A stretch of DNA of 64,000 nucleotides from Styela clava (Eukaryota), in NCBI RefSeq assembly GCF_964204865.1, contig NC_135254.1, positions 11,284,001 to 11,348,000 on the forward strand, written 5' to 3'. Shown here one piece after another: positions 3,437-57,385 of this stretch. Every line of letters starts with the position of its first letter. Position 1 is the stretch's first letter. A program made the translations under genes and the position numbers. The notes under the pieces are model-generated. The model saw only the letters and a list, made by a program, of their open reading frames with translations, ran no database searches and was not told the DNA's origin.

Positions 3437-4759
3437 CGATTAATGATGATTAATTGGATATAGTGGACATAATCCCATATTGACAGTTTTGTAAAACCTC
3501 ACTTTGTTTTATAGATCATATTCCAGTTATACTCTGCGAGCCAAAAGTGAGATAACAGTTAATTGACTGAAAATAACTGTTACCCTATACATTTGTTCGA
3601 CCCGTAAATATTTTCAATAATAAAAATATTAAAAAAGGCACTTAGATTAAATATATTTTAGCAAGACTTGTTTACAAAACCTATTCAAATATGTGTCACA
3701 ACTGTAAAGTCTAAAGTAAATCTGAAAATTTACAAGCTTTGGGCATCCGCAAGGTGGCAGAATGCAGCTGAGCTAATTTTCATAACTAAATAAGAGAGCA
3801 ACGCTCAAATAAATAGACACGAAACCAAAATGAAATATTTTACCCACAGTTTCCCCAAAAATAATATTCTGAACGAAGCCAGTGTCTGAATTGCTCAAGC
3901 TTTCCCAGGTCCTGCAACAATGCTGAATATGCGTCTAGTCACAACGGGAGTAAAAATAGCAACTGTAGTATCAAATATTTTACAGTACGGTCGATCTACC
4001 GTACCATGTGGCTAGCCAAGGTCACCTTCAAAATTTGTCAAACTTCTTGCCTCTTTCGCTTCAAGCAATGCAGCTATAGTGGGGAATTCCTCCGCAACCA
4101 TGTGGTCTGATGGCTCTTCTCTTCAATATATACCGTCGAATATTAATCTAGCTCTAAATATATTAGATGGTTAATTTTCTATATACAGTTTAAAACTAAG
4201 ACTCTGCTCGCAACAAAAACAGTTGTTCTAAAACAACAAGCTTTCACACATGCTCATTGATTTAACCAATGAAAAATTCAAAATATATCATAAGACGACT
4301 TTCATTATTATATAATGTTAAGGGATATGCTTAAATCTGGCATCACAGTCGCATATCAATGCAATATACTAGCAGCTGATATACATACACATGAATCTAG
4401 AATACACTTTTCTCTATGAAAACGCTATTTTTGATTAGTAGCAATCTTGATATAATTATAACAAAAATATGTGGTTAAAGGCATATCGAAAAATATAATA
4501 TAATGATGTCGAATGTCTGTGATATTTTATCATTCAGTGGGGAAACAGAAAGAAATGCAAATACAAAGATGGTTCACCGCCCATGCATTAGGTAAATACA
4601 AACAGACAATATATTTGAAGTCAAGCATCTTAATGCGCCACACTTCTGGAAATATTCAGGAAGGACTTGGTGACTTGACAGGCGGTTAGGAACACGTGTC
4701 AAGTTGTATAATTGGGCGTGCATAAGTAATCATTTTATCAGTGATGTAGAATAGCTTCG

Positions 4760-5016
4760 GGATAAGATTTACATATTTATCACAAGTAAGGGAAAGTCGA
4801 TAAAACGGCTGCATCATATGGAGAAACACGGTCTCTCGTTCGGTACCAGTCCATGTCGGGCATGGGATTAGTTAGCCAGGTATTTGTTGCAGATGCATAG
4901 ACTTGATGGTGGAGGAAGCCGTGACCGACCAGCGTTTGCATGAACCACCATACGGTAGCGAAGAGTCCAGCAACCCCTTTGGCACATAATTACCCCCGCG
5001 GGATTCGAACCTGCGA
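4760..5016 (-). mobile_element. tRNA-derived SINE, 5'-truncated copy
   Basis: Colinear with 3063-3360. B-box GGTTCGAATCC on the minus strand near 5000-5012. Confidence 0.7.
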
Positions 5017-5020
5017 TTTG

Positions 5021-5702
5021 AACCTAACAAATCCTAAAATTTTTATGTTGTATTTTATACTTTATCGATCTGAAAATATCATTAAAATTTATTTTCTCAA
5101 GTCCTGATTTTATAAGCTATATTGCTTTCTGTATTACTGAATTTCTATATTCTGATTGAAATAACCACAAACAATCAAACATAACATAACGTTAATAAAT
5201 CATAATAAACTTGACTGAACAGAAAGTAAATTTTATTGCTAATGAAAATTTAAATAAATTATCAATTCACAGAATAGGAATCTTTTGATAAACGTTCTTG
5301 AACAATATCTGAATGGGTTATGTGAAAAATAATCCTAGTCATAAAAAATTATGAGACATAAAATTGATGTAAATCACGTGAAAAAAATCTGGTTTTAGTT
5401 AATGTTAAAATATTTCACAATAAAAAATTGCGACTGGTATTCCCATTTGCTAACTAGAGATGACACAAATGTTTTTCAAGTAAATTGAATTTTAATTAAG
5501 CAAGCACGTAAACAAAACCACGATCAAAGTTTGAAAACGCAATTTGAAATATGATTTGGCAAATAAAATCCAAGTAAGCGACGAAAATAAGCTTTTCAGG
5601 GACACATTAATGATGTCTTTGGCATTTTTGGTTGGTGAAATATTAAAAAAATTATAGAAGGGTGTCAAAATGACCCAGGAACACCAGGGGTCATTAGGTT
5701 AA
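5021..5702. mobile_element. Possible piggyBac-like non-autonomous element
   Basis: Right end GGGTGTCAAAATGACCC...CATTAGGTTAA finishes in TTAA. A degenerate left end (TGAACCTAA) sits where the SINE is cut off. Confidence 0.3.
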
Positions 5703-10600: not shown

Positions 10601-13600
10601 TTCTGGTTAGGATCCGAATCAAGCCAGGATGAACGAGGAGCAGCAGCCATATTAACGTGTCAAATGGACGAATATATGGGAGGAGATCCAGTGCAATATA
10701 GACAACTACAAGGATATGAAAGTTCAGAGTTCATGGCGATGTTTAAGACTGGTGTAAAGTACATGGTTTGTAAAAATTTAGTAACATTTGTTACAGATTT
10801 GATGTTTGAACTATTGTGAAGTGGAGTCGAATATGCATTGACAGTCTAACTATAATACTTCAGTTGATGCTTTTCTTATCTTTATAGATAGTTATGTACG
10901 TTTCACCTCATTCATTTTTATGCTGTCGCATAATATCTGTGATCTTTATTTGATCGCATTGCCATAAAACATATCGAGGCCATGCTTTCTCTACAAAATA
11001 GAGAAATCAGTTTAAAATTTCAGCTTGAAATCAGTTAAGATTTATAGTAAGGAACTAATCGATATTTATAAAGTGAACATACTTCGCCGAAGACCTCGCT
11101 GCCGAAATGATTCTGTACAAACCATCTCACCTTGGTATGAAACAGTGATGTTTGAAGTGGCTGGAACCTTTTCAGATCATACTTTATTTATGTTCACAGA
11201 TAAATCAGATTAACTTGGATTGTTATGCCAATTTATACAGTTTGTAATTCCTTAAGATTTGACATGATGATACTGGCATATTTATGATTTCAGACCGTAT
11301 AAATTGCAGCAGTCAATTCACCTCTGGGTTACAGGAATTTTATATATAAAACTTAAAGCCCATACATATAAAAATTTGAAAAAAAAAAAAAAAATTTTAA
11401 AGTTATTTATAGAGCAGCGCGAGCGAGCTCCAGTACAGTATTTTTAGAGACAATATTCGAACTATCGCAATTACATATCTCGACTAAGTACAAAATAATT
11501 TTGGGATAATATATTTTATACGCATGGAATTAAGATAATTACAGCATGCCGCTCACATGTCATCAATCAAGCTTTATCTCTAGCTGTTTATTTTTTTAAG
11601 ATTTAACGATTAATATAGTTACAATTTTTGTTCTTAGGGTATGTTTCCTACAAAATCTTCCGCGAGACAACAGAAATTGACGCACTAATATATTTTGTAT
11701 TTAATATATATGTGCTTGGATATAGTCAAAATATAATATCACACATTGTCAGTTGATCAGAATGCAGAAGTACTGAAGGAAATTTTAAAAAAAACGTGCA
11801 CAACAATTGAAATTATCCGATTAACTTTTACCAATTGTTTAAAACAAAGCCAGTTGAACGAGAACCTAATCTTGTATTCACAAGTTAATGTAGTTTTGAG
11901 CTGATCAACGTGATGGGCTTAAAATGAAGACTAATCACCTATCTGCAATAACAACCATCTAATTCTAAGTAGACTATACGCTTTGACCATAAGTTAACAT
12001 ATAACACGATTTCGTTATAAAGAAGAGAAATTTAACAACTAATGATTTCATTTGTACATTATTGATAAACAATGAATATTTTACGATTAACATACTTCAC
12101 CTCTTTGGTTCGCTAACACCTCTGTTCTGGAAAGTTTTAAAAACAGTAGCCAGTAAGTAAAATATTAATAGGTTTCAGGAAAGGGATATACTCACTTCAC
12201 CATAAACCGCTACAGGCCTGTCAAACAGTTTAAAACCAATCAGTAATCAGTAGTTTATTTTTTCACCTTATCGATGATACACACTTATTAAATACACATA
12301 CCGAATGTAAAAAAGGCACTTTTGGGTGAAAAAGCTGAGCACATGTTTTGATAAAATCTATACAACTGACTTGAATAACATGGGAACATTGTATTCGTCT
12401 CATTTCAGCAAGGTGGAGTTGAATCTGGATTCAAGCAGGTAAAAACAAACGTCAGTGAATCGAAACGACTTCTTCATGTCAAAGGTAGAAGATCAGTTCG
12501 CGCGACAGAAGTTCCGATGAAATGGTCCAGCTTCAATCACGGAGACAGTTTTATTCTCGATTATGAAAATGTGAGTTATATTACATTACTTGTTTCAAAT
12601 ATCGTATTTTACGGACCACGAGGCGCACCGTATTTAAGACTAAATGAATTGCTTAGATTGTTTTTCATCCATACATAAGGCGCATCGGAATATAAGACGC
12701 GACGAATTTAAAGTGATTTATTTACTGGTTTAGAGTGTGGGCAATAAATCATGATGCACTGCCTGACCCATACATTAGCCGCACCGGCTTATAAGGAACA
12801 GGGTTAATTTCTGAGAGAGAAAAATGATCTAAAATGCGTCTTATGATCTGCAAAATACGGTAAATCAAAAAGTCTGTATGACGCGGACCACGTTGAAGTA
12901 ACTTCAAATATATTTCTGTGTGCTGTTTAAACGGTCTGGAACTGTAAATTTTATGCAATACTGTAACCTTCGGTTGCATATTTCTGTATGGCTATAGAAT
13001 CATTAAAATTAGTGCACGGAGTTATTCCGTTAGTATACAAATGCAGAAAATAGTTAATCTGGTATTTATATTATCATTTTTGCAAAAACTGACATTAAAT
13101 ATTATCCTTCGTAGAATTTGTTAAAAAATGTGGTCTGTCATATCAATCTCTCTTCCTAATAATTTGTAGCAATTCGTGAGACTTAGAATCTCAGAAGTAT
13201 TCTAATGATTTTGCTCCGGACTTAATTATAAGAGTCCTATGGTAGTAATGACATACCACATACCAATGCCATAAGAATAGCATAGGTAATTGTGTGTGTT
13301 CATTGATATAGTGATTTGATAACATTGTATATGTCATTCCTAAGTGATTCAAGAGTCTTGCTGCACACTAACACAAATATATTTCTGTAACGTTTCGTCT
13401 GACCAAGGTCAGACTTCTTCAGACATACATAATTCAACTACAACACGAAAAGCAGTTACATGCATATTTAAACAATCATAGTAGAATTATAGGAGTCACG
13501 CATGTTAAATAATCAATAAAATCTGTGAATTTCTTGATTAAATAACAGCGGGTGGCCGAAATAAGTGTCATTGATGAGATCTCTCTCTTTGTTTTATATT

Positions 13601-16600
13601 TAGCAATTGAAGTCCAAATTACACAATGGTGTTTTATTTCTCAGTATTGTATAATGCAGACCAAAAAAGTTGTCTGTGTGTCAAATGTAATATAGTGATA
13701 TTTTGTCTGGTATTAGCATATCTGGCCCTGCATGATCCAATTCTGAGAAAAAAATATATTAGGTACAAGAATTGATTTAAACAATGAATGAAAATATCTA
13801 AACTTCCTTAATATTCATCCCTTGTGGTTCGTGTGTCCCGAAAAGATGAATGTAATGGGATTCCTTGTTCTTTCGATAAATGTGGTCATGAAATAGTTTT
13901 TCAATGCCAATGACACTCAAATCTTTAAGCAAATGTCCCGGTTGACTGAAATGGGCGCCAACAACCAGATCTTTGTTTTGGGTTTTTATACTTCTAATAT
14001 GCTCAGTTATTCGGTATGACCACATTTATCGAAAGAACAAGGAATCCCATTACATTCATCTTTTCGGGACACACGAACCACAAGGGATGAATATTAAGGA
14101 AGTTTAGATATTTTCATTCATTGTTTAAATCAATTCTTGTACCTAATATATTTTTTTCTCAGAATTGGATCATGCAGGGCCAGATATGCTAATACCAGAC
14201 AAAATATCACTATATTACATTTGACACACAGACAACTTTTTTGGTCTGCATTATACAATACTGAGAAATAAAACACCATTGTGTAATTTGGACTTCAATT
14301 GCTAAATATAAAACAAAGAGAGAGATCTCATCAATGACACTTATTTCGGCCACCCGCTGTTATTTAATCAAGAAATTCACAGATTTTATTGATTATTTAA
14401 CATGCGTGACTCCTATAATTCTACTATGATTGTTTAAATATGCATGTAACTGCTTTTCGTGTTGTAGTTGAATTATGTATGTCTGAAGAAGTCTGACCTT
14501 GGTCAGACGAAACGTTACAGAAATATATTTGTGTTAGTGTGCAGCAAGACTCTTGAATCACTTAGGATTGTTATCTCTACTCTTGCTACAGCATCCTTGC
14601 AATATATGCATACGGATCCACCGGCACAAAAACATAGAAGAAGGATAAGTAGTTAGTTTCGCAGAAACCAAATAATTGTATATGTCAGTTGCGAAACAAA
14701 AGAAACCAAACAATCACTATAAGTTTGGTTGTTTTCACGACGACAAATGAAACTAATGTCATTTGAATTCTCATTTTAACCTGCTTTTCAGAATGTTTAT
14801 CAATGGAACGGCAAAGAATGCAACCATTTTGAGAAACTGAAAGCTAACAACGTAGCACGCGCAATAATCAGCTACGAAAAAGGTGGCAAAGGCAAACTTA
14901 TTAAAATAGAAGACGGAGAAAGGATACCCATAAATATGTTGCAGGTTGGTTTAAACTTTCGTAAATATAATCAGAATTAGGAATTTAGTAAACAACATTG
15001 AAAATTTTCTTGAGAAAAGACAATTTTACATCCTTCTAGTATGAGTTGTGTCTCCATATACAGGCTCTTCTGGGTACACCAGGCGACATCCTACCTTCAG
15101 TACCCGATGACGTTGTACTATCAACGGACACATCGCCAGCTGTTCTTTATCATGTGTGTGCCGATACAGGAAAACTCATAATTACCGAAATAGGATATGC
15201 ACCACTTGAACAAGACCAGCTGGACAGTGGCGATTCTTACATTTTGGACAATGGATCTCAAGGAAAAATTTTTGTTTGGAAAGGTGAATGACTTACCAAT
15301 TCGGAACTAGTGAAAAATTCCGGTTTTAATGAAGCCATACACCGATGTCACCACAAGCGGTTAACAATGTGCGCTTACCATTGTTTTAATTTCAATTTTT
15401 GACATGTCTGCCTATGAATATATGATTGGGTTCCATCTTTGCACCCACGTACATTTGCATCCAGAACAATCGCACCTACATACTTTTGCACCCACTGACA
15501 TTTGCACCCTTGAACAATTGCACGCGCAGATTTTAGCACCCACATACAGGTTGCATCAATGGACATTTGTACTCACGCACATTTGCACCAACGTAAATTT
15601 GCACCCACAGACATTTGCACTCATAAACATTTACACACACATGTATTTTGCGGTAATACGTAATTTTGAGTACGAATTCGGTACGATTCACCAAAAAAAA
15701 GTTAATATTTGCATTCTAATATTATGGAGTCACTAATAAGCAACTCATGACATCAAATCATGTGACAGGGTATTTGCGTCACCAAGCACACACTTTGTAT
15801 ACGATGAACCTCCAAAAACGTCAGTTGTTAAAACGCTGTATAGTGTTCATCTTCTAATCGGTTTCTTGTCCAGTTCCCTGATCTGGATTCGAGTCGCAAA
15901 CACCTTAAAACAAATAGCTCTAGTAACGATGACTCCAACAGAATTCGCGTATTGGAATTGTCCATTGTCATATTCTAACCTGTAAACATTAGTCAACGAT
16001 AAAAAAATGAAACAACTTCGAACCGAAAATTTCGAAAAATCGATTTAAAACGACATGAAAGTTGCATTTACTTATATGTTAATATTAGGCAAAGGAGCAA
16101 GTAGAGAGGAGCGACTCGGAGCTTTGGAATATGCCAACAAATTCATCGAGAGAAAAAATTATAGCGAAAGTACTGGAATTGAAATAATGGCGGAAGGAGC
16201 TGAAACAATTTTGTTCAAGCAATTCTTTTCGTCTTGGAGAAATAAAGATGAAACTGTCGGTTTCGGAAAAATTTACGCTGCCAACAAGATTGCAAAAATA
16301 GAACAGGTACTGTGATGTTTTCGTATTAAATCATTTTTCACTTCGTTTGCATTCTGAAGTGTCAGAGACATCGGCTTCAAAAATAATGTAAAATTGAAAA
16401 TTGATAAATTTCGGCATAAAAGATGTACACTGTAGTATACATAAAAATTTAATATAGCACACAACGAATTCACCCAAAAGATCTATTGCCAAATAATTAG
16501 TTCAAAAAAAGAAATATATATATATCGTTCGTAATGGAATATCTGATTTTATATTCAAACCTCTGACGAAACTTTCGTGGAAAAATAAAATGATAAATTG

Positions 16601-51800: not shown

Positions 51801-54800
51801 AAATATACTACTTAAGCTTTAAAAAGGGGGGTTAAAGCTATTTAGTCTAATCAATAGGCGTGGTTATAAAAAGTAGAATGTAAAAGAACCACTTAATAAA
51901 GCACAAACCTCATCCTGTGTTGCATGTGATCCCTGCCAGAAGTAGATGATATATTCTTCTTTTCTCCCAACTTTATACGTGTATAACATGACGTAACAAT
52001 CGCCCGAGAAGAAAATTCCATATTTGGACTTGTCAACTGGCTTCAAAGAATCTTCCACACGCCAGATTTCGAGCTATTGTGAAATAGTTTTATCATAAAT
52101 AAATATCAGACGACAACTGAATAGTGAATAATGAGCGGAATAAATTGATTGATTCCAAGTGAATAACAACTATATGATCATGGGTTCTGCTTTTATTTTA
52201 TACTGTATGTTTAAGATTATATTTGGGGACAATCCGGGTATTACGACGAGCATGGGGGGCTATTTAGGTTTTTTCTTATTATAAATCGGGATTAGAAGAT
52301 TGGTTTTATAGCATTTTTGTTGTATTAAAAACGATGTATTATAGAATACAATATTGATTATACACGTACATTTTTATTGGGTTGATAAGTCGCCAGAAAA
52401 ATAGATATTATTTTCAATATAGCCAAACATCAAATACGCGATTAGACGAACTGGGTATATTTTATGTAATATAAAATTGAAGCAATTTTGTTTCATTTTT
52501 ATATCTCACCTTTCCAGTTCCGTCATCGACCATTCTGTACTTTGCCGCCAGTTTGGAGTTGCTCAGAGATTTCATGTCAAATTTGATCTGTAAAAAGTTG
52601 AAAATGGTATTATGATTTCTGATATCGAAATGGATAACAACTTGAGATCATATGCATGTAATATACATAGGGATTCATGTATATCGAAGAAGTCACCTTA
52701 GGGGCACTGAGCTTTAGTACTTGATTAAAAAATATTAGACAAAATGGAGCAAATTTGCACGTTATTTATAATTCTTTTTTTTTAATAACCTGCTGGATCT
52801 TGGCAATCTTGTTTTCGCTGTATTTCTCCCCAAATCCGATGGTGTCGCCTTTATTTCTCCATGATTTGAAGAATTGCTTGAACATGATGCTTTCAGATCC
52901 TTCTCCCATCATCTCAATGTTGGTGTAGTCTTTATAGTTTTTATCTTTGATAAAATCAGTAGCGTTCTTAAGTGCACCGCTACGTTCATCCTTGCTTGCC
53001 CCCTTGCCTAAAGAAAAAACAATAAGAGCAATGCTCAAATATATAGGACCAACCGTCACACATCGCTACGGGTAGGGTAAGTCACGAAAGCACTAAGTTA
53101 ACTGAAAAGCAATACGAGAAGAAAGTGTTCTCCTTTAAATTGAAAAACAGCAAAATTTTGGTGTCCATTGAAAAAAGTGAAAGTGATAGCCGTCAAAGGA
53201 CCCTTTTCTCTTTAGGTACCGAAGTTTAGAAATCTACTGGTTTATTAATTACAGAGAAAATCAACCCCCTAAACATATAACCCAATAAATGTATATATTG
53301 TCCCACCTTTCCACACAAAAATCTTTCCATGTGATCCGTTGTCAAGAATGTAGCAATCCCCACTCTTCAGCTCTCCTTGTTGGAACGGAGCTTTTCCAAC
53401 TTCTGTGACTTTAAGAGATCCCGTATCCGAACTTACGTGATACAAGGAAGCGGGAACTTTCTTCTCCTCAACCTTGATATCATCTGACGTCGCCGGTTGA
53501 ATATCGGATGGGGATCCTTCCAAAACCTAGAAAAGATGTCGTTTAGTATGCTATAAAGTACGACGAGTCGTTTTTTTAAATATTTATTTTTTCAAAATGC
53601 GCACGACAAGTAAGGATGTAAATCTACAATGCGTAAAATGTAAAAAATTATTTGACTTAAAAAAAAGGTAAATAAATTCCCCACATTTGCACATAAATTT
53701 TTTTAGTATAGCTTACAGTACAGATACCGGGAATTAGGAAATATATTGAGAAATTATACTGAATAATCTCGCAAAAGTCTATAGGCTAGATTGGGTCGTA
53801 ATGGTGTAGAGGTAAGATCGGGCCCAAAAGTTCCAGCCCGACCCGACCCAGGCCCGTGGGTATTGAACCCGACCCAGCCTAAGCCCGACCAATTAACTGG
53901 ATTTGCAGGCCATAGTCCGAAGCAAATCTGAAATTTCATATTTCATTTAGGAGTTCTTTGAATTGTCATTTATTTTATAACAAGTATTTCTAAGTTTAGT
54001 ATCCACACATAGTTTTAGTATATATATTTTTTTAAACATATATTTATTTTAAAAAAAGTCAGCGATAGAGAAGCCTTGCCGACCCGACCCGAACATAATG
54101 ATTGCCATTTCAGGCCTGGGCTCCAGATCTTAGCACTATAACGTTGTCGCATTAGATGAGCACCATGTCCTCTCAAAAGATCTCCCATTTTTTATAAAAA
54201 ATGCAACTTAAAATGGAACAGCAGAAGTTTGGGTGAAACGTCGGGTCCCATTGGGCGATTGGTCTTGGTGAGAATTTCGGGTAGCTACAGTTTGTAGCTT
54301 TTGATTGAGTAGCCTATTCATTATAAATCATTAAATGAATATTCTACCTTCAGCATAATATCCGGTACTCTGTCTTCTGGCTCGACTTTCGTATGTTTTC
54401 CTTTTCCTCCCTTTTCGTCGCTAATTATGGCTCTGGCAACGTTGTCCGCTTTCAGTTTTTCAAACATATTGCATTCTTTTCCATTCCATTGGAAAACGTC
54501 CTGACGAAACAAAAACGTGAGGAATTTCAAAATATTTTGAAAATCAAAATTTTGGTTTAAAGTCATTTATACAACGTTCCTCCTTTTCTTTATATATTGT
54601 CTTGAATTTTCTCTTATTGATTATTTGATGAATGTTTAAAATATGAATAGGTTTTTAAAAATCATGTTGTGAGTTTCCTTTAGTCCCGGTTTGTACATAT
54701 GCATTTGATTGAACTCAAGTTCATCGTGTATAAAAGTGTTATTATAAAAGTGCATCAAATAAAAACTATTATATTTGGCTTCGAAGTATAAAATGGAATA

Positions 54801-57385
54801 CATTCTGACAGCGCAATACTAACATTTCCATAATCAAGAATAAAACTGTCTCCATGATTGAAGCTTGACCATTTCATCGGAACTTCTGTTGCTCGAACTG
54901 ATCTTCTACCTTTGACATGAAGAAGTCGTTTCGATTCACTGACGTTTGTTTTCACCTGCTTGAATCCAGATGCTACTCCCCCTTGCTAAAAATAAAGTTA
55001 TATTTCATTAAAAGCAATATTGCCACAGTACAGTACGTCTTATTTCGGATTATTTGTATTTGTTTTACCAGACTATGAAATAAACATGTATTTTTTGAGT
55101 AGCGTTTTCGAATCGAATTTCTTACTCAAAAAATCGATTGTGACGGCCATGGAACACTAAAACATTGTTTCTTGCGAATTATCCCTCATTAAAAGCTCAT
55201 TCATTATGTGCTAATCTTGAAATATCTCCTATGAATTATTTATACAAGAAAATTTGATTCATTGTAAGAATCGTGTAATATACATTGAAACATGATGGAT
55301 TAATGACGCAACAAATGAACAAATGTTCGGCTCAACTCGCAGTTTTTAATGTTGTTGAAATATTGTACGTCTGTATCATTTTGTCGTGACTCTTCAATAG
55401 ATAAAATGCATATTTAGGTAGCATTCACACGCCTTTTTCTGAACACTATTCTGACATGACGCTTTATTTGTCGGTTTAATCGCGTACGGTCGAATGTGTC
55501 ATTCGAATAACATGGCACATCATTGCGATTTCCGGCGCAACGGGCCGTTAGAGTTTACATATACTTTTGCTATTTAACATAACACGGTGTAAGAACATGA
55601 ATGTTTATTTTCATTGTTAGATTACCTCGATGACGTTCATCCAGAAACATTCTGATTCACAGCTTGCTGACTGTTTGCAAAAGCATCGACCCGGAAACGC
55701 GTAGTGTGAACCGACGTTACTTGTTATTTCAATCAAATATATTTTTCGACTATCAAGATTTTTGTTTCGAAAACAGTAATAATTTTAAGAGTAATCAATG
55801 CAAATTAACTAGGTTTTTGTTTTTGACTAATTACATGGTCTATTATCCGGCGCTCCCGTAGTATGTTATTTTATTTCTATTAAGATTATGACCTAACTAT
55901 AACCTGATACACATACTACGTTTCGGTGTCCGCCACCTCGGTTCACATACTACATGAGTACCCAATATCCTTATTTAGCAATTTCCGTATTGCGGAAGTA
56001 TGAAAATGTGACCCTTTTGGTAGGTTTTACCAGAACACTATCAGAAACGAGTTAATATTCAACAGTTCTGGTTCCGAGGGGAATTTTCTGCATTAAGGCG
56101 TAGCAAACATGAGCAAACCATCAGGCATAAAATATTATCGTCTTATACACGTTTGAACAAACATGGTTCTACGAATCATCGAACAGAGATAAATTGAACA
56201 AATATTTATCAAAGATAAAGCATATGTTAAAGTTTACACAGCAATAACAATATGAAACTGGTACTTTCACCTAATTTTAAAACCCGTAATTAATCTCCGG
56301 GAAATTCTTGTTCGCAGAGTACAAGGTTCACATGGATTCCGATAACGAATACGGAATATTTTATTGCAAGCAGAGGATTTCATATAGTTACTGCATTTTT
56401 ATCCATTTATTAGTGACTCAACCCAGATTTGGTATTTGATTATCTGTCAGAAATATAATATGAATCCATGTTCCTTCCCTAACTAAATCAAGTTTAACAA
56501 GTGATTTATAGCTATCATATTTCAAGTTCAATGTTTACCATAAAACAGACGAAAAATCGGAACAATGTACATGAATTGGCGACACGACGCTACTTCTCTT
56601 GTATAAAAAAGTTCAGTCAGCAAAACTCGTCTCAATGGTGGCTATGACAATACAGCTATGTGCATCTGCCATATGTCAAATATTTGAGTTTGCGTCCAGG
56701 ATGATGCTCCATCATTTTGCCTCATAATACGTTTAGTCTTTTGTGAGTGAGTTAATAAGAAAGGCAAATATGAAAATGAAAAGATGCTTTTATCAATCTA
56801 TTTTATCCAAATAACTTTATAGTAGACAAATAACTTGGATACTAAATCTCTTTTGTATGGGTATAATCGAATATTACCGAATACTTGACTCCGTTTTTGA
56901 AAAGTGCCATGAATTCACGACTTTCGTGTTCTTGTGTTTGTCTGTATTGAACAGGCTCTCCTCCTAAGTAGTCATCCATTTGGCAAGTTATTATCGCTGC
57001 TGCTCCACGTTCGTCTTGACTTGATTCCCTGCCCAGCCAGAAATGAAGATCCCATCGCATTTTTCCGCATTTAGCTGAAATAAAAATGGATTTTTTTATC
57101 GAAGAGAATGCCAAAACGCTTTAATTCTATAACGGCAATGTGTGCTAGTCTTACTATGTTCAACGTGTATATAATTGAAGTTAAATTATAATTCAATAAA
57201 ACAAGATACAAGAATATATATCCTTGCAAACCTTCAATGGTCTTCAGAACAATGTACGAGTCTCCAACATGGAAATTTCCCAGTAATGCTTGGGCGTTCG
57301 CCACTAAATTCAATTTTTCTATTCGCCATGCCTGTACGCCTTCTTTCTTGCCAGCAGTTTCAAATATTGCGGTCAGATCAGCCAT
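48867..57385 (-). CDS. GSN: Gelsolin-family protein B (six domains, about 716 aa with exon 13a; all canonical Ca2+ ligands kept; no headpiece)
   Basis: Exons 57385-57232, 57074-56878, 54985-54824, 54500-54348, 53526-53307, 53007-52790, 52587-52510, 52073-51909, 51370-51176, 51012-50850, 50518-50354, 49729-49585, 49002-48867. Intron positions and phases match gene A. The spliced ORF is open. Confidence 0.93.
49887..50180. mobile_element. Degenerate hAT-like MITE in gelsolin B intron 11
   Basis: CAGGGGCGGGACTA...CCGGGGCAA left end and TAGGCACGCCGCTG right end. TSD not preserved. Confidence 0.5.
51696..51797 (-). repeat. Local duplicate of the gelsolin B exon 9 3' end and donor, placed in intron 8
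   Basis: Matches about 51120-51223. Confidence 0.85.
53807..54138. mobile_element. hAT-type MITE in gelsolin B intron 4
   Basis: TIRs TAGAGGTAAGATC and GATCTTAGCACTA. CCCGA subterminal repeats. TSD TAATGGTG/TAACGTTG (6 of 8 match). Confidence 0.65.

What the first reader, a model, noticed from the sequence alone, without database searches (positions are those of the whole stretch)
13324..14687. 1.2-kb palindromic Penelope-like insertion with paired hammerhead ribozymes inside a gelsolin intron
Seen: 552-bp inverted arms with no mismatch noticed by eye, a GIY-YIG C-terminal ORF, a candidate 13-bp TSD, and a minimal hammerhead (CUGAAGA, 8-bp stem II, GAAACGUU) in each arm. Known: Penelope-like elements carry minimal hammerheads in their pseudo-LTRs, thought to act as dimers through a palindromic stem III, and they often insert as inverted repeats. 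Inference: gelsolin A pre-mRNA contains a sense ribozyme plus its antisense made earlier in the same transcript. This would give a 552-bp hairpin that could mask self-cleavage, be A-to-I edited, yield siRNAs against the element family, or affect intron 3 splicing. Arm identity suggests a young insertion and a recently active family.
Basis: partly seen in the sequence, partly recalled or inferred. Interest (0 to 1): 0.8.

Follow-up and report, generated by a model that had tools for sequence, protein, structure and literature searches.

The report
Head-to-head truncated Penelope retroelement insertion
A young, dead-on-arrival insertion of a Penelope-like retrotransposon sits in an intron of a gelsolin gene as two truncated copies joined head-to-head, each carrying that family's usual minimal hammerhead ribozyme motif; it is real, but it is an ordinary example of a known kind of element.

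Summary
The arms 13338-13889 and 14016-14567 are 552 bp and perfectly complementary, with a 126-bp spacer between them. A 13-bp target-site duplication (ATTGTATATGTCA) lies at 13324-13336 and 14675-14687. One minimal hammerhead motif sits in each arm, on opposite strands.

The insert is two 5'-truncated copies of one Penelope-like element (PLE) family joined 5' end to 5' end:
- Copy A is on the minus strand (14015 to 13338) and has no "tail".
- Copy B is on the plus strand (14016 to 14674) and includes a 104-bp tail.

The same genome holds 3.4-kb parents with an uninterrupted 940-codon frame (Pfam RVT_1 and GIY-YIG), about 99% identical to the insert. The hammerhead meets every published criterion for PLE minimal hammerheads and shows compensatory changes between PLE families of this genome. 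No Rfam model detects it, and cleavage was not tested.

The host gene is gelsolin-like and on the plus strand. The insert lies in the intron between exons 12409-12570 and 14792-14941.

Inverted 5'-truncated copies, tails, variable duplications, opposite-strand hammerhead pairs and siRNAs from Penelope inverted repeats are all already published. Earlier follow-ups of this scan reached the same verdict on other fold-back PLE inserts in this genome. Long-read support and the proposed RNA-level effects remain untested. Interest is low.

The parts
13324..13336 (.). Left copy of the 13-bp target-site duplication ATTGTATATGTCA
   Evidence: Read directly. It is the longest word shared by the two flanks. 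It starts with ATT, the cleavage motif preferred by a characterised PLE protein (PMC11167929).
13338..14015 (-). Copy A: a 5'-truncated PLE copy without tail, made of the left arm 13338-13889 plus the 126-bp spacer 13890-14015. It covers the C-terminal part of the endonuclease ORF and the 3' UTR/pLTR.
   Evidence: It is collinear with full-length copy L031 positions 4555-5235, with 6 differences in 678 nt. Other genomic copies match 13335-14017 without a break.
13798..14025 (-). 75-aa remnant ORF holding the C-terminal half of the PLE GIY-YIG endonuclease, downstream of the YIG motif. Its first codons run across the head-to-head junction.
   Evidence: 96% identity to residues 76-149 of the L002 ORF; Pfam GIY-YIG on that ORF.
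13384..13427 (-). Minimal hammerhead motif of copy A. It is antisense in the gelsolin pre-mRNA.
   Evidence: Mirror image of 14478-14521. The pattern match is at 13390-13422(-).
14016..14567 (+). Copy B body (right arm): a 5'-truncated PLE copy carrying the last 28 codons of the ORF and the 3' UTR/pLTR
   Evidence: A 2-nt AT microhomology lies at the junction 14015|14016.
14478..14521 (+). Minimal hammerhead motif of copy B, sense in the pre-mRNA. Helix I is 14478-14482/14517-14521. The core is CUGAAGA at 14483-14489, followed by an extra A. Helix II is 14491-14497/14502-14508. GAAA is followed by the palindrome ACGU. The predicted cleavage site is after U14516.
   Evidence: The criteria are those of PMC4209133. 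Covariation count.
14568..14674 (+). The 'tail': about 104 bp present only on copy B. In full-length copies the same sequence lies between the pLTR end and the ORF start.
   Evidence: L031 1842-1945, 97% identity; two classes of 3' ends, near 547-567 and at 658-659. The tail concept is described in PMC8557442 and PMC11167929.
14675..14687 (.). Right copy of the 13-bp target-site duplication
12409..12570 (+). Upstream host exon (gelsolin repeat), followed by a GT donor
   Evidence: Pfam Gelsolin on 12379-12675. A contig of a putative RNA run covers 12408-12571, though with 9 differences, so it may come from the paralog. tblastn.
14792..14941 (+). Downstream host exon (gelsolin repeat), preceded by a cag acceptor. 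The insert ends 117 nt upstream of it.
   Evidence: Pfam Gelsolin on 14780-14977

Best explanation
This is a one-off retrotransposition product of an endonuclease-bearing Penelope-like element (PLE). The family has a 3.4-kb unit and a single ORF with RT followed by a C-terminal GIY-YIG domain, of the Neptune/Nematis type.

The most likely route to the structure is as follows.
1. The element's endonuclease nicked both strands of an AT-rich intron site 13 bp apart, which produced the duplication of the target site.
2. Each 3'-OH primed reverse transcription of element RNA. One priming began at the inner start site and gave copy A, without tail. The other began at the outer start site and gave copy B, with the 104-bp tail.
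3. Both cDNAs stopped early, after about 680 nt and 660 nt.
4. Their 5'-truncated ends were joined through a 2-nt microhomology.

The result is a 1.34-kb insert with element 3' ends facing outward and a 552-bp perfect palindrome. Each arm carries the pLTR's minimal hammerhead because that motif lies about 50 nt from the inner start site.

The insert has no RT and no complete endonuclease, so it cannot move. For the host it is most likely a neutral intronic passenger. In the pre-mRNA it would fold into a long hairpin that sequesters the single sense hammerhead.

Shown: the anatomy, the parent element, the family's youth and the motif's conservation. Inferred: the two-strand priming mechanism (by analogy with in vitro work on another PLE) and every RNA-level consequence.
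For: - Anatomy.
- Parent element: L031 and L032 each have a 940-codon open frame with RVT_1 (7.8e-10) and GIY-YIG. The translation shows DKG, FIDD, CX4CxxC and the two Cys between GIY and YIG, which are the PLE diagnostics listed in PMC8557442.
- Pseudo-LTR: the upstream partial tandem copy of L031 differs from the downstream one at 1 of 238 nt.
- Two 3'-end classes: about 24 copies end near 547-567 and about 20 at 658-659. This matches the two RT start sites that define the tail in PMC11167929.
- Both-strand priming: the same paper shows that a PLE protein nicks and extends both DNA strands and prefers ATT.
- Recurrence: the arrangement of an inverted tail-less copy next to a tail-bearing copy recurs at L022 and L030. 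It is described as typical for PLEs in PMC8557442.
- One-off junction: no other locus shares the junction 14015|14016.
- Hammerhead: it has all four emergent features listed in PMC4209133. In 17 sequences from this genome, 86% of cells pair against 30-37% in slid controls, and 5 pairs change on both sides.
- Hairpin: the predicted fold is -1032 kcal/mol with the arms fully paired.
Against: - No long read or listed contig was shown to span the palindrome.
- The two-strand priming mechanism is borrowed from in vitro work on a lizard PLE of another clade.
- The tail here is 104 bp, against the 30-40 bp usually reported.
- No Rfam hammerhead model matches. Published minimal PLE hammerheads cleave poorly in vitro and are not needed for insertion in vitro.
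- The covariation rests on essentially two hammerhead lineages, so it reflects few independent events.
Confidence: 0.9

Rival explanations
1. Assembly or library fold-back artefact: the palindrome does not exist in the animal's DNA.
For: Complex PLE inserts are known to trouble assemblies (PMC8557442). No spanning read or contig was listed. Several private letters of this copy (13664, 13778, 13828, 13931) were not seen in the few Hi-C reads sampled.
Against: - A fold-back chimera would not be bounded by a 13-bp duplication with unique host intron on both sides.
- It would not have a tail on one arm only, a spacer collinear with the parent, or a microhomology junction.
- The same architecture recurs elsewhere in the genome and in the literature.
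- Sampled read depth on the flanks was only about 1x, so missing private letters carry little weight.
Confidence: 0.03
2. The insert is real, but it was made by snap-back: one cDNA folded on itself and was copied back, instead of two independent primings on the two target strands.
For: Self-priming of cDNA is a classical reaction. The 2-nt microhomology at the junction and the complete identity of the arms, including five differences from L031 that both arms share, would fit this route.
Against: In a snap-back product the spacer belongs to the first-made strand. Here that is copy A, which lacks the tail. The copied-back arm could not then acquire 104 bp that its template lacks, yet copy B has the tail. 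Shared private letters are equally expected if both cDNAs came from RNA of one source locus.
Confidence: 0.05
3. The palindromic unit is itself a non-autonomous fold-back element (MITE-like or retrozyme-like) that spreads as a unit.
For: This genome holds many short hammerhead-bearing PLE derivatives (earlier scan notes). The hammerhead module and the tail are about 100 times more abundant in reads than the element's interior.
Against: - Among 47 scored matches and 30 fetched loci, none shares this junction. Other inverted pairs have different truncation points and filler bases.
- Retrozymes are direct tandem repeats, not inverted ones.
- The arms are plain 3' parts of an RT-encoding parent.
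Confidence: 0.02

Closest known systems
Canonical endonuclease-bearing Penelope-like elements with complex tandem/inverted insertions (Evgen'ev & Arkhipova 2005; Craig et al. 2021, PMC8557442)
   Same: - Single ORF with RT followed by a C-terminal GIY-YIG carrying the CCHH motif, plus the DKG motif.
- Pseudo-LTR formed by a partial tandem copy.
- Heavy 5' truncation and an inverted 5'-truncated copy beside the main copy.
- A tail at one end only, and target-site duplications of variable length.
   Different: - Here both copies are severely truncated, so nothing autonomous remains.
- The tail is about 104 bp instead of 30-40 bp.
- The CX4CxxC linker points to the Neptune/Nematis type, but no phylogeny was made.
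Minimal hammerheads of metazoan PLEs (Cervera & de la Pena 2014, PMC4209133)
   Same: [quoted passage not shown]
- G10.1-C11.1, a 7-8 bp helix II and a short helix I.
- No helix III hairpin, but a palindrome at 15.1-16.1 that allows a dimer.
- Location in the pLTR.
- That paper also reports pairs of such motifs 100-700 bp apart on opposite strands.
   Different: That paper stresses extreme variability of the motif within a genome. Here a roughly 75-nt module holding the motif is 88-96% identical between PLE families whose endonucleases are only 54-79% identical. Activity was not tested here.
PAc, the Poseidon PLE of Anolis characterised in vitro (Frangieh et al. 2024, PMC11167929)
   Same: - Two reverse-transcription start sites that bracket the tail at the pLTR-ORF junction.
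- Nicking and extension of both target strands.
- Preference for ATT in AT-rich DNA. The duplication here begins with ATT.
   Different: - It belongs to a different clade and host.
- In PAc the start sites lie inside the ORF. Here the outer site lies about 45 nt upstream of the first ATG.
- Nothing was tested biochemically here.
Twin priming of LINE-1 (Ostertag & Kazazian 2001; cited from my own knowledge)
   Same: Both target strands prime cDNA synthesis, which gives an inverted, 5'-truncated structure flanked by a target-site duplication with a microhomology junction.
   Different: L1 twin priming inverts the 5' part of one template, so the two segments do not overlap. Here both arms copy the same 3' region, which implies two template molecules or two passes.
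Non-LTR retrozymes (Cervera & de la Pena 2020; Li et al. 2026 preprint, 10.64898/2026.07.22.740005)
   Same: They derive from PLE pLTRs and carry hammerheads.
   Different: Retrozymes are head-to-tail repeats whose same-strand hammerheads can excise a unit as circular RNA. This insert has only one sense motif per strand, so no unit can be excised.

Membership tests
Penelope-like element (EN+, C-terminal GIY-YIG) | Single ORF with a reverse transcriptase followed by a GIY-YIG endonuclease | tested here: met
   The parent copy L031 hits RVT_1 at 7.8e-10 (aa 408-592). It hits GIY-YIG at aa 833-914 with 22.5 bits, 0.1 bit under the 22.6 cutoff. The 149-aa ORF of L002 passes the cutoff (25.4 bits). 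The window copy keeps only the last 74 residues.
Penelope-like element (EN+, C-terminal GIY-YIG) | PLE-specific motifs: DKG upstream of the RT, and a CCHH finger with two Cys between GIY and YIG (PMC8557442) | tested here: met
   PADKGGG and VIYLISCKKCGMQYIGET...EH...H are read in the L031 translation. CX4CxxC (CGRKSCSTC) is also present, which marks the Neptune/Nematis type. No RT phylogeny was made.
Penelope-like element (EN+, C-terminal GIY-YIG) | Pseudo-LTR from a partial tandem copy, an optional inverted 5'-truncated copy, and a tail at one end | tested here: met
   L031 has a 238-bp upstream partial copy, then the tail, then the ORF. The window and loci L022 and L030 have inverted pairs with the tail on one arm only.
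Penelope-like element (EN+, C-terminal GIY-YIG) | Target-site duplication of variable length | tested here: met
   13 bp here, 9-12 bp at L014, and 5-9 bp at L031.
PLE minimal hammerhead (Cervera & de la Pena 2014) | Conserved core: CUGANGA ... GAAA with a non-G nucleotide at the cleavage site | tested here: met
   CUGAAGA, GAAA and U17 are read directly. The core columns are invariant in 17 sequences, but those sequences were selected with that pattern.
PLE minimal hammerhead (Cervera & de la Pena 2014) | Features not imposed by the search: an extra nucleotide between 9 and 10.1, G10.1-C11.1, a long helix II, and a palindrome at 15.2-16.2 | tested here: met
   - The extra A is invariant.
- G-C is present in 15 of 17 sequences.
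- Helix II has 6-7 bp, with changes on both sides at two pairs (C-G/U-A and U-A/A-U).
- The palindrome is ACGU in one lineage and AGCU in the other.
- Helix I pair 13-50 is G-C or A-U.
All. The AGCU lineage was first found with a pattern that did not require the palindrome.
PLE minimal hammerhead (Cervera & de la Pena 2014) | Self-cleavage, as a dimer or with protein help | not testable with these tools
   This needs in vitro transcription. Published relatives cleave weakly as dimers or only with the element's protein.
Rfam hammerhead families (type I/II/III, HH9, HH10) | Match to a curated covariance model | tested here: not met
   There is no hammerhead hit at E<=1 on 4 kb or at E<=10 on 131 nt. 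This is expected, because the motif has no helix III hairpin.
Non-LTR retrozyme | Head-to-tail repeats with same-strand hammerheads that bound an excisable unit | tested here: not met
   The two motifs are on opposite strands and no direct repeat of the unit is present.
Fold-back DNA transposon / MITE | The same inverted-repeat unit present at many sites | tested here: not met
   The junction is unique among the loci examined, and the arms are the 3' part of a retroelement.

The most novel reading that the evidence does not exclude
The perfect 552-bp intronic hairpin, transcribed from the gelsolin promoter, is processed into small RNAs or edited. It would then act as a newborn host-driven source of siRNAs against a PLE family that still has copies with uninterrupted ORFs, or it would perturb splicing of intron 3 on the filled allele. 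The unitig break exactly at 14675 hints that the insert may be heterozygous, which would allow an allele-by-allele comparison within one animal.
Probability: 0.12. Interest if true: 0.45.

Novelty: new member of a known kind. Interest (0 to 1): 0.2.

Why it matters
The main value is for annotation. The finding shows that the fold-back, hammerhead-bearing repeats scattered through this genome are by-products of an apparently recently active PLE family, not a new class of element or a host ribozyme.

It also gives a clean natural example that fits the two-start-site, two-strand priming model proposed from in vitro work on a distant PLE:
- The tail sits on one arm only.
- The target-site duplication begins with ATT.
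- The head-to-head junction uses a 2-nt microhomology.

If the insert is polymorphic, it could serve as a natural test of what a long intronic hairpin does to a housekeeping cytoskeletal gene.

Tried and rejected
- Rfam scans on 4 kb and on 131 nt found no hammerhead. This was not taken as refutation, because the models need a helix III hairpin.
- Pfam on the 75-aa window ORF alone gave nothing. The match appeared only through the longer ORF of sister copies.
- A search for a haplotig with the empty site failed: the left flank is single-copy in the assembly.
No empty-site joint and no spanning piece was among the rows shown.
- Within-family variation of helix II looks mostly like decay of dead copies and was not used as covariation evidence.
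- Two abundant matches to the loose pattern (CTGAGGATTCTGACCC... and CTGAAGAGCAAGTATG...) cannot form helix II. They were dismissed as unrelated repeats.
- PDB sequence search and NCBIfam on the parent ORF gave nothing.
- The large protein searches were not spent, because the family scans already placed the protein.
Exons were scanned one by one.
- Snap-back synthesis and a transposing fold-back unit were considered and rejected, as set out under the rival explanations.
Full report
**Observation.** The repeat finder reports arms 13335-13889 and 14016-14570 with 126 nt between them. Read base by base, position 13337 does not pair with 14568, so the perfect arms are 13338-13889 and 14016-14567, 552 bp. 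ATTGTATATGTCA occurs at 13324-13336 and 14675-14687, with different bases on either side. The right side has about 104 extra bases (14568-14674) between the arm and the duplication. The left flank is single-copy in the 377-Mb assembly.

**Anatomy.** Other copies of the repeat in the same genome match 13335-14017 without a break, and separately match 14016-14676. The spacer therefore belongs to the left, minus-strand copy.
- Copy A runs from 14015 down to 13338 on the minus strand, about 680 nt.
- Copy B runs from 14016 to 14674 on the plus strand: 552 nt of arm plus the extra segment.
- They are joined 5' end to 5' end, with a 2-nt AT microhomology at the junction.
- The 3' ends of both copies face the host flanks.

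**Parent element.** A protein search of the genome with the 149-aa ORF of a sister copy found many relatives. Two of them have an uninterrupted 940-codon frame at 98-99% identity. In locus L031 the order is as follows:
- a 238-bp partial upstream copy;
- the 104-bp segment;
- an ORF of 927 aa counted from the first ATG;
- a 3' UTR that ends where copy A ends.

The unit is 3394 bp.
- The ORF hits Pfam RVT_1 (7.8e-10) and GIY-YIG.
- Its translation shows DKG, FIDD, CX4CxxC and two Cys between GIY and YIG. Craig et al. 2021 list these as diagnostics of canonical endonuclease-bearing PLEs, and the linker finger marks the Neptune/Nematis type.
- Copy A differs from L031 at 6 of 678 positions.
- L031's two terminal repeats differ at 1 of 238 positions.
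- The two long ORFs differ at 27 of 2781 nt.

The family is therefore young. The window's 75-aa ORF is the endonuclease C-terminus downstream of the YIG motif. On its own it has no Pfam hit.

**Tail and mechanism.** Among 47 scored matches, about 24 end at unit positions 547-567 and about 20 end at 658-659.
- In full-length copies the 104-bp segment lies between the pLTR end and the ORF start.
- This is the PLE "tail" (PMC8557442).
- Frangieh et al. 2024 explain the tail by two internal reverse-transcription start sites at the pLTR-ORF junction.
- They also show that a PLE protein nicks and extends both DNA strands and prefers ATT (PMC11167929).

Two primings, one on each strand, explain everything seen here:
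- 3' ends that face outward;
- a tail on one arm only;
- a 13-bp staggered-cut duplication that begins with ATT;
- truncated 5' ends joined by microhomology.

Snap-back copying of a single cDNA does not fit. The spacer marks copy A as the first-made strand, copy A lacks the tail, and so the copied-back arm could not have gained it. Loci L022 and L030 also hold inverted pairs with the tail on one arm. None shares this junction, so this palindrome is a one-off product and not a transposing unit.

**Hammerhead.** The motif lies at 14478-14521(+) and mirrored at 13384-13427(-). Its parts, in order, are:
- the CUGAAGA box;
- an extra A;
- a G10.1-C11.1 pair that opens a 7-8 bp helix II;
- GAAA;
- the palindrome ACGU instead of a helix III hairpin;
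- U at the cleavage site;
- a short helix I.

These are the features Cervera and de la Pena (2014) list for metazoan PLE minimal hammerheads, including those that their search did not impose. They also report motif pairs on opposite strands 100-700 bp apart.

No Rfam model matches, as expected without a helix III hairpin.

The exact motif occurs at least 399 times in the genome, against 19 for the reversed control. A second PLE-associated lineage has the palindrome AGCU, helix II GUUAGA/UCUAAC, and helix I with U-A or C-G at pair 1.2-2.2. On 17 sequences, 86% of cells pair against 30-37% when partners are slid, and five pairs change on both sides. Only about two lineages contribute, so the independent events are few. 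Catalysis is untested.

**Host context.** Plus-strand exon pieces on both sides hit Pfam Gelsolin.
- The insert lies in the intron between exon 12409-12570 and exon 14792-14941. That intron is 2221 nt, and about 870 nt without the insert.
- The insert ends 117 nt upstream of the acceptor.
- A paralog on the minus strand (exons at 54985-54824 and 54500-54351) has a 323-nt intron there and no insert.
- Folded as RNA, 13300-14720 gives a fully paired 552-bp stem at -1032 kcal/mol.

The lone sense hammerhead would thus be buried, and it has no same-strand partner for a dimer. Cleavage of the pre-mRNA is therefore unlikely. siRNAs from Penelope inverted repeats are already reported in flies (PMC3681739). 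Editing, small RNAs and splicing effects at this locus are untested.

**Reads.** The single read-laying run used four runs.
- The hammerhead module (14480-14558) and the tail are about 100 times deeper than the element's interior. They are shared by other PLE families: the module is 88-96% identical in families whose endonucleases are 54-79% identical.
- No listed piece spans the palindrome.
- In run X1 a unitig starts exactly at 14675 and carries about the summed depth of the two haplotypes seen at 13134-13305.
- In run X5, from a different organism label, a contig aligns from exactly 14675 with 14 unaligned letters before it.
- Both observations are what an empty allele would give, but the letters themselves were not shown, so this is only a hint of polymorphism.
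- The putative RNA contig over exon 12408-12571 has 9 differences and may come from the paralog.

**Limits.** No exon-joined model was built.

**Verdict.** The kind of element is well described in the literature. Earlier follow-ups of this scan reached the same verdict for other fold-back PLE inserts of this genome.

Noticed in passing
window 14480-14554, and L033-L045: A roughly 75-nt module (the hammerhead plus the 40 nt downstream of it) is 88-96% identical between PLE families whose endonucleases are only 54-79% identical. In reads it is about 100 times deeper than the element's interior. It is the most conserved non-coding part of these elements.
   Followed up: partly
L051:323-383, L056-L061, L080 (about position 1487-1547): A second PLE-associated minimal hammerhead lineage has the palindrome AGCU, a different helix II and two helix I variants. 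It is present in dozens of copies.
   Followed up: partly
G000:C4:6205669-6211058: Hammerhead motifs recur at exactly 2678-bp spacing on one strand. This suggests a head-to-tail array of a PLE or an internally deleted derivative.
   Followed up: no
G000:C2 (for example 278121, 288646, 460797) and C1/C2 (for example C2:23884235-23913092): Two abundant repeats match the loose pattern CTGANGA...GAAAGCT but cannot form helix II. They are probably unrelated dispersed or tandem repeats with 7-10 kb spacing.
   Followed up: no
window 54351-54985, minus strand: A paralogous gelsolin gene has its exon 3 homolog 96% identical and its exon 4 homolog 72% identical at the protein level. The intron between them is only 323 nt and carries no PLE insert.
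   Followed up: partly
window 13134-13305: Run X1 holds two unitigs of similar depth over this stretch. One is identical to the window and the other has 10 substitutions and 1 indel in 172 nt, which implies a highly heterozygous sample.
   Followed up: no
window 13084-13168, minus strand: A weak Rfam match to the plant snoRNA family snoR18 (30.6 bits, gathering score 55, E=0.49) lies in AT-rich intron sequence. It is most likely chance.
   Followed up: no
L031:1595-1603 and 5230-5244: The full-length copy is flanked by ATTGAATTT, whose first bases are ambiguous with the element's own end. This is a second target that begins with ATT.
   Followed up: partly
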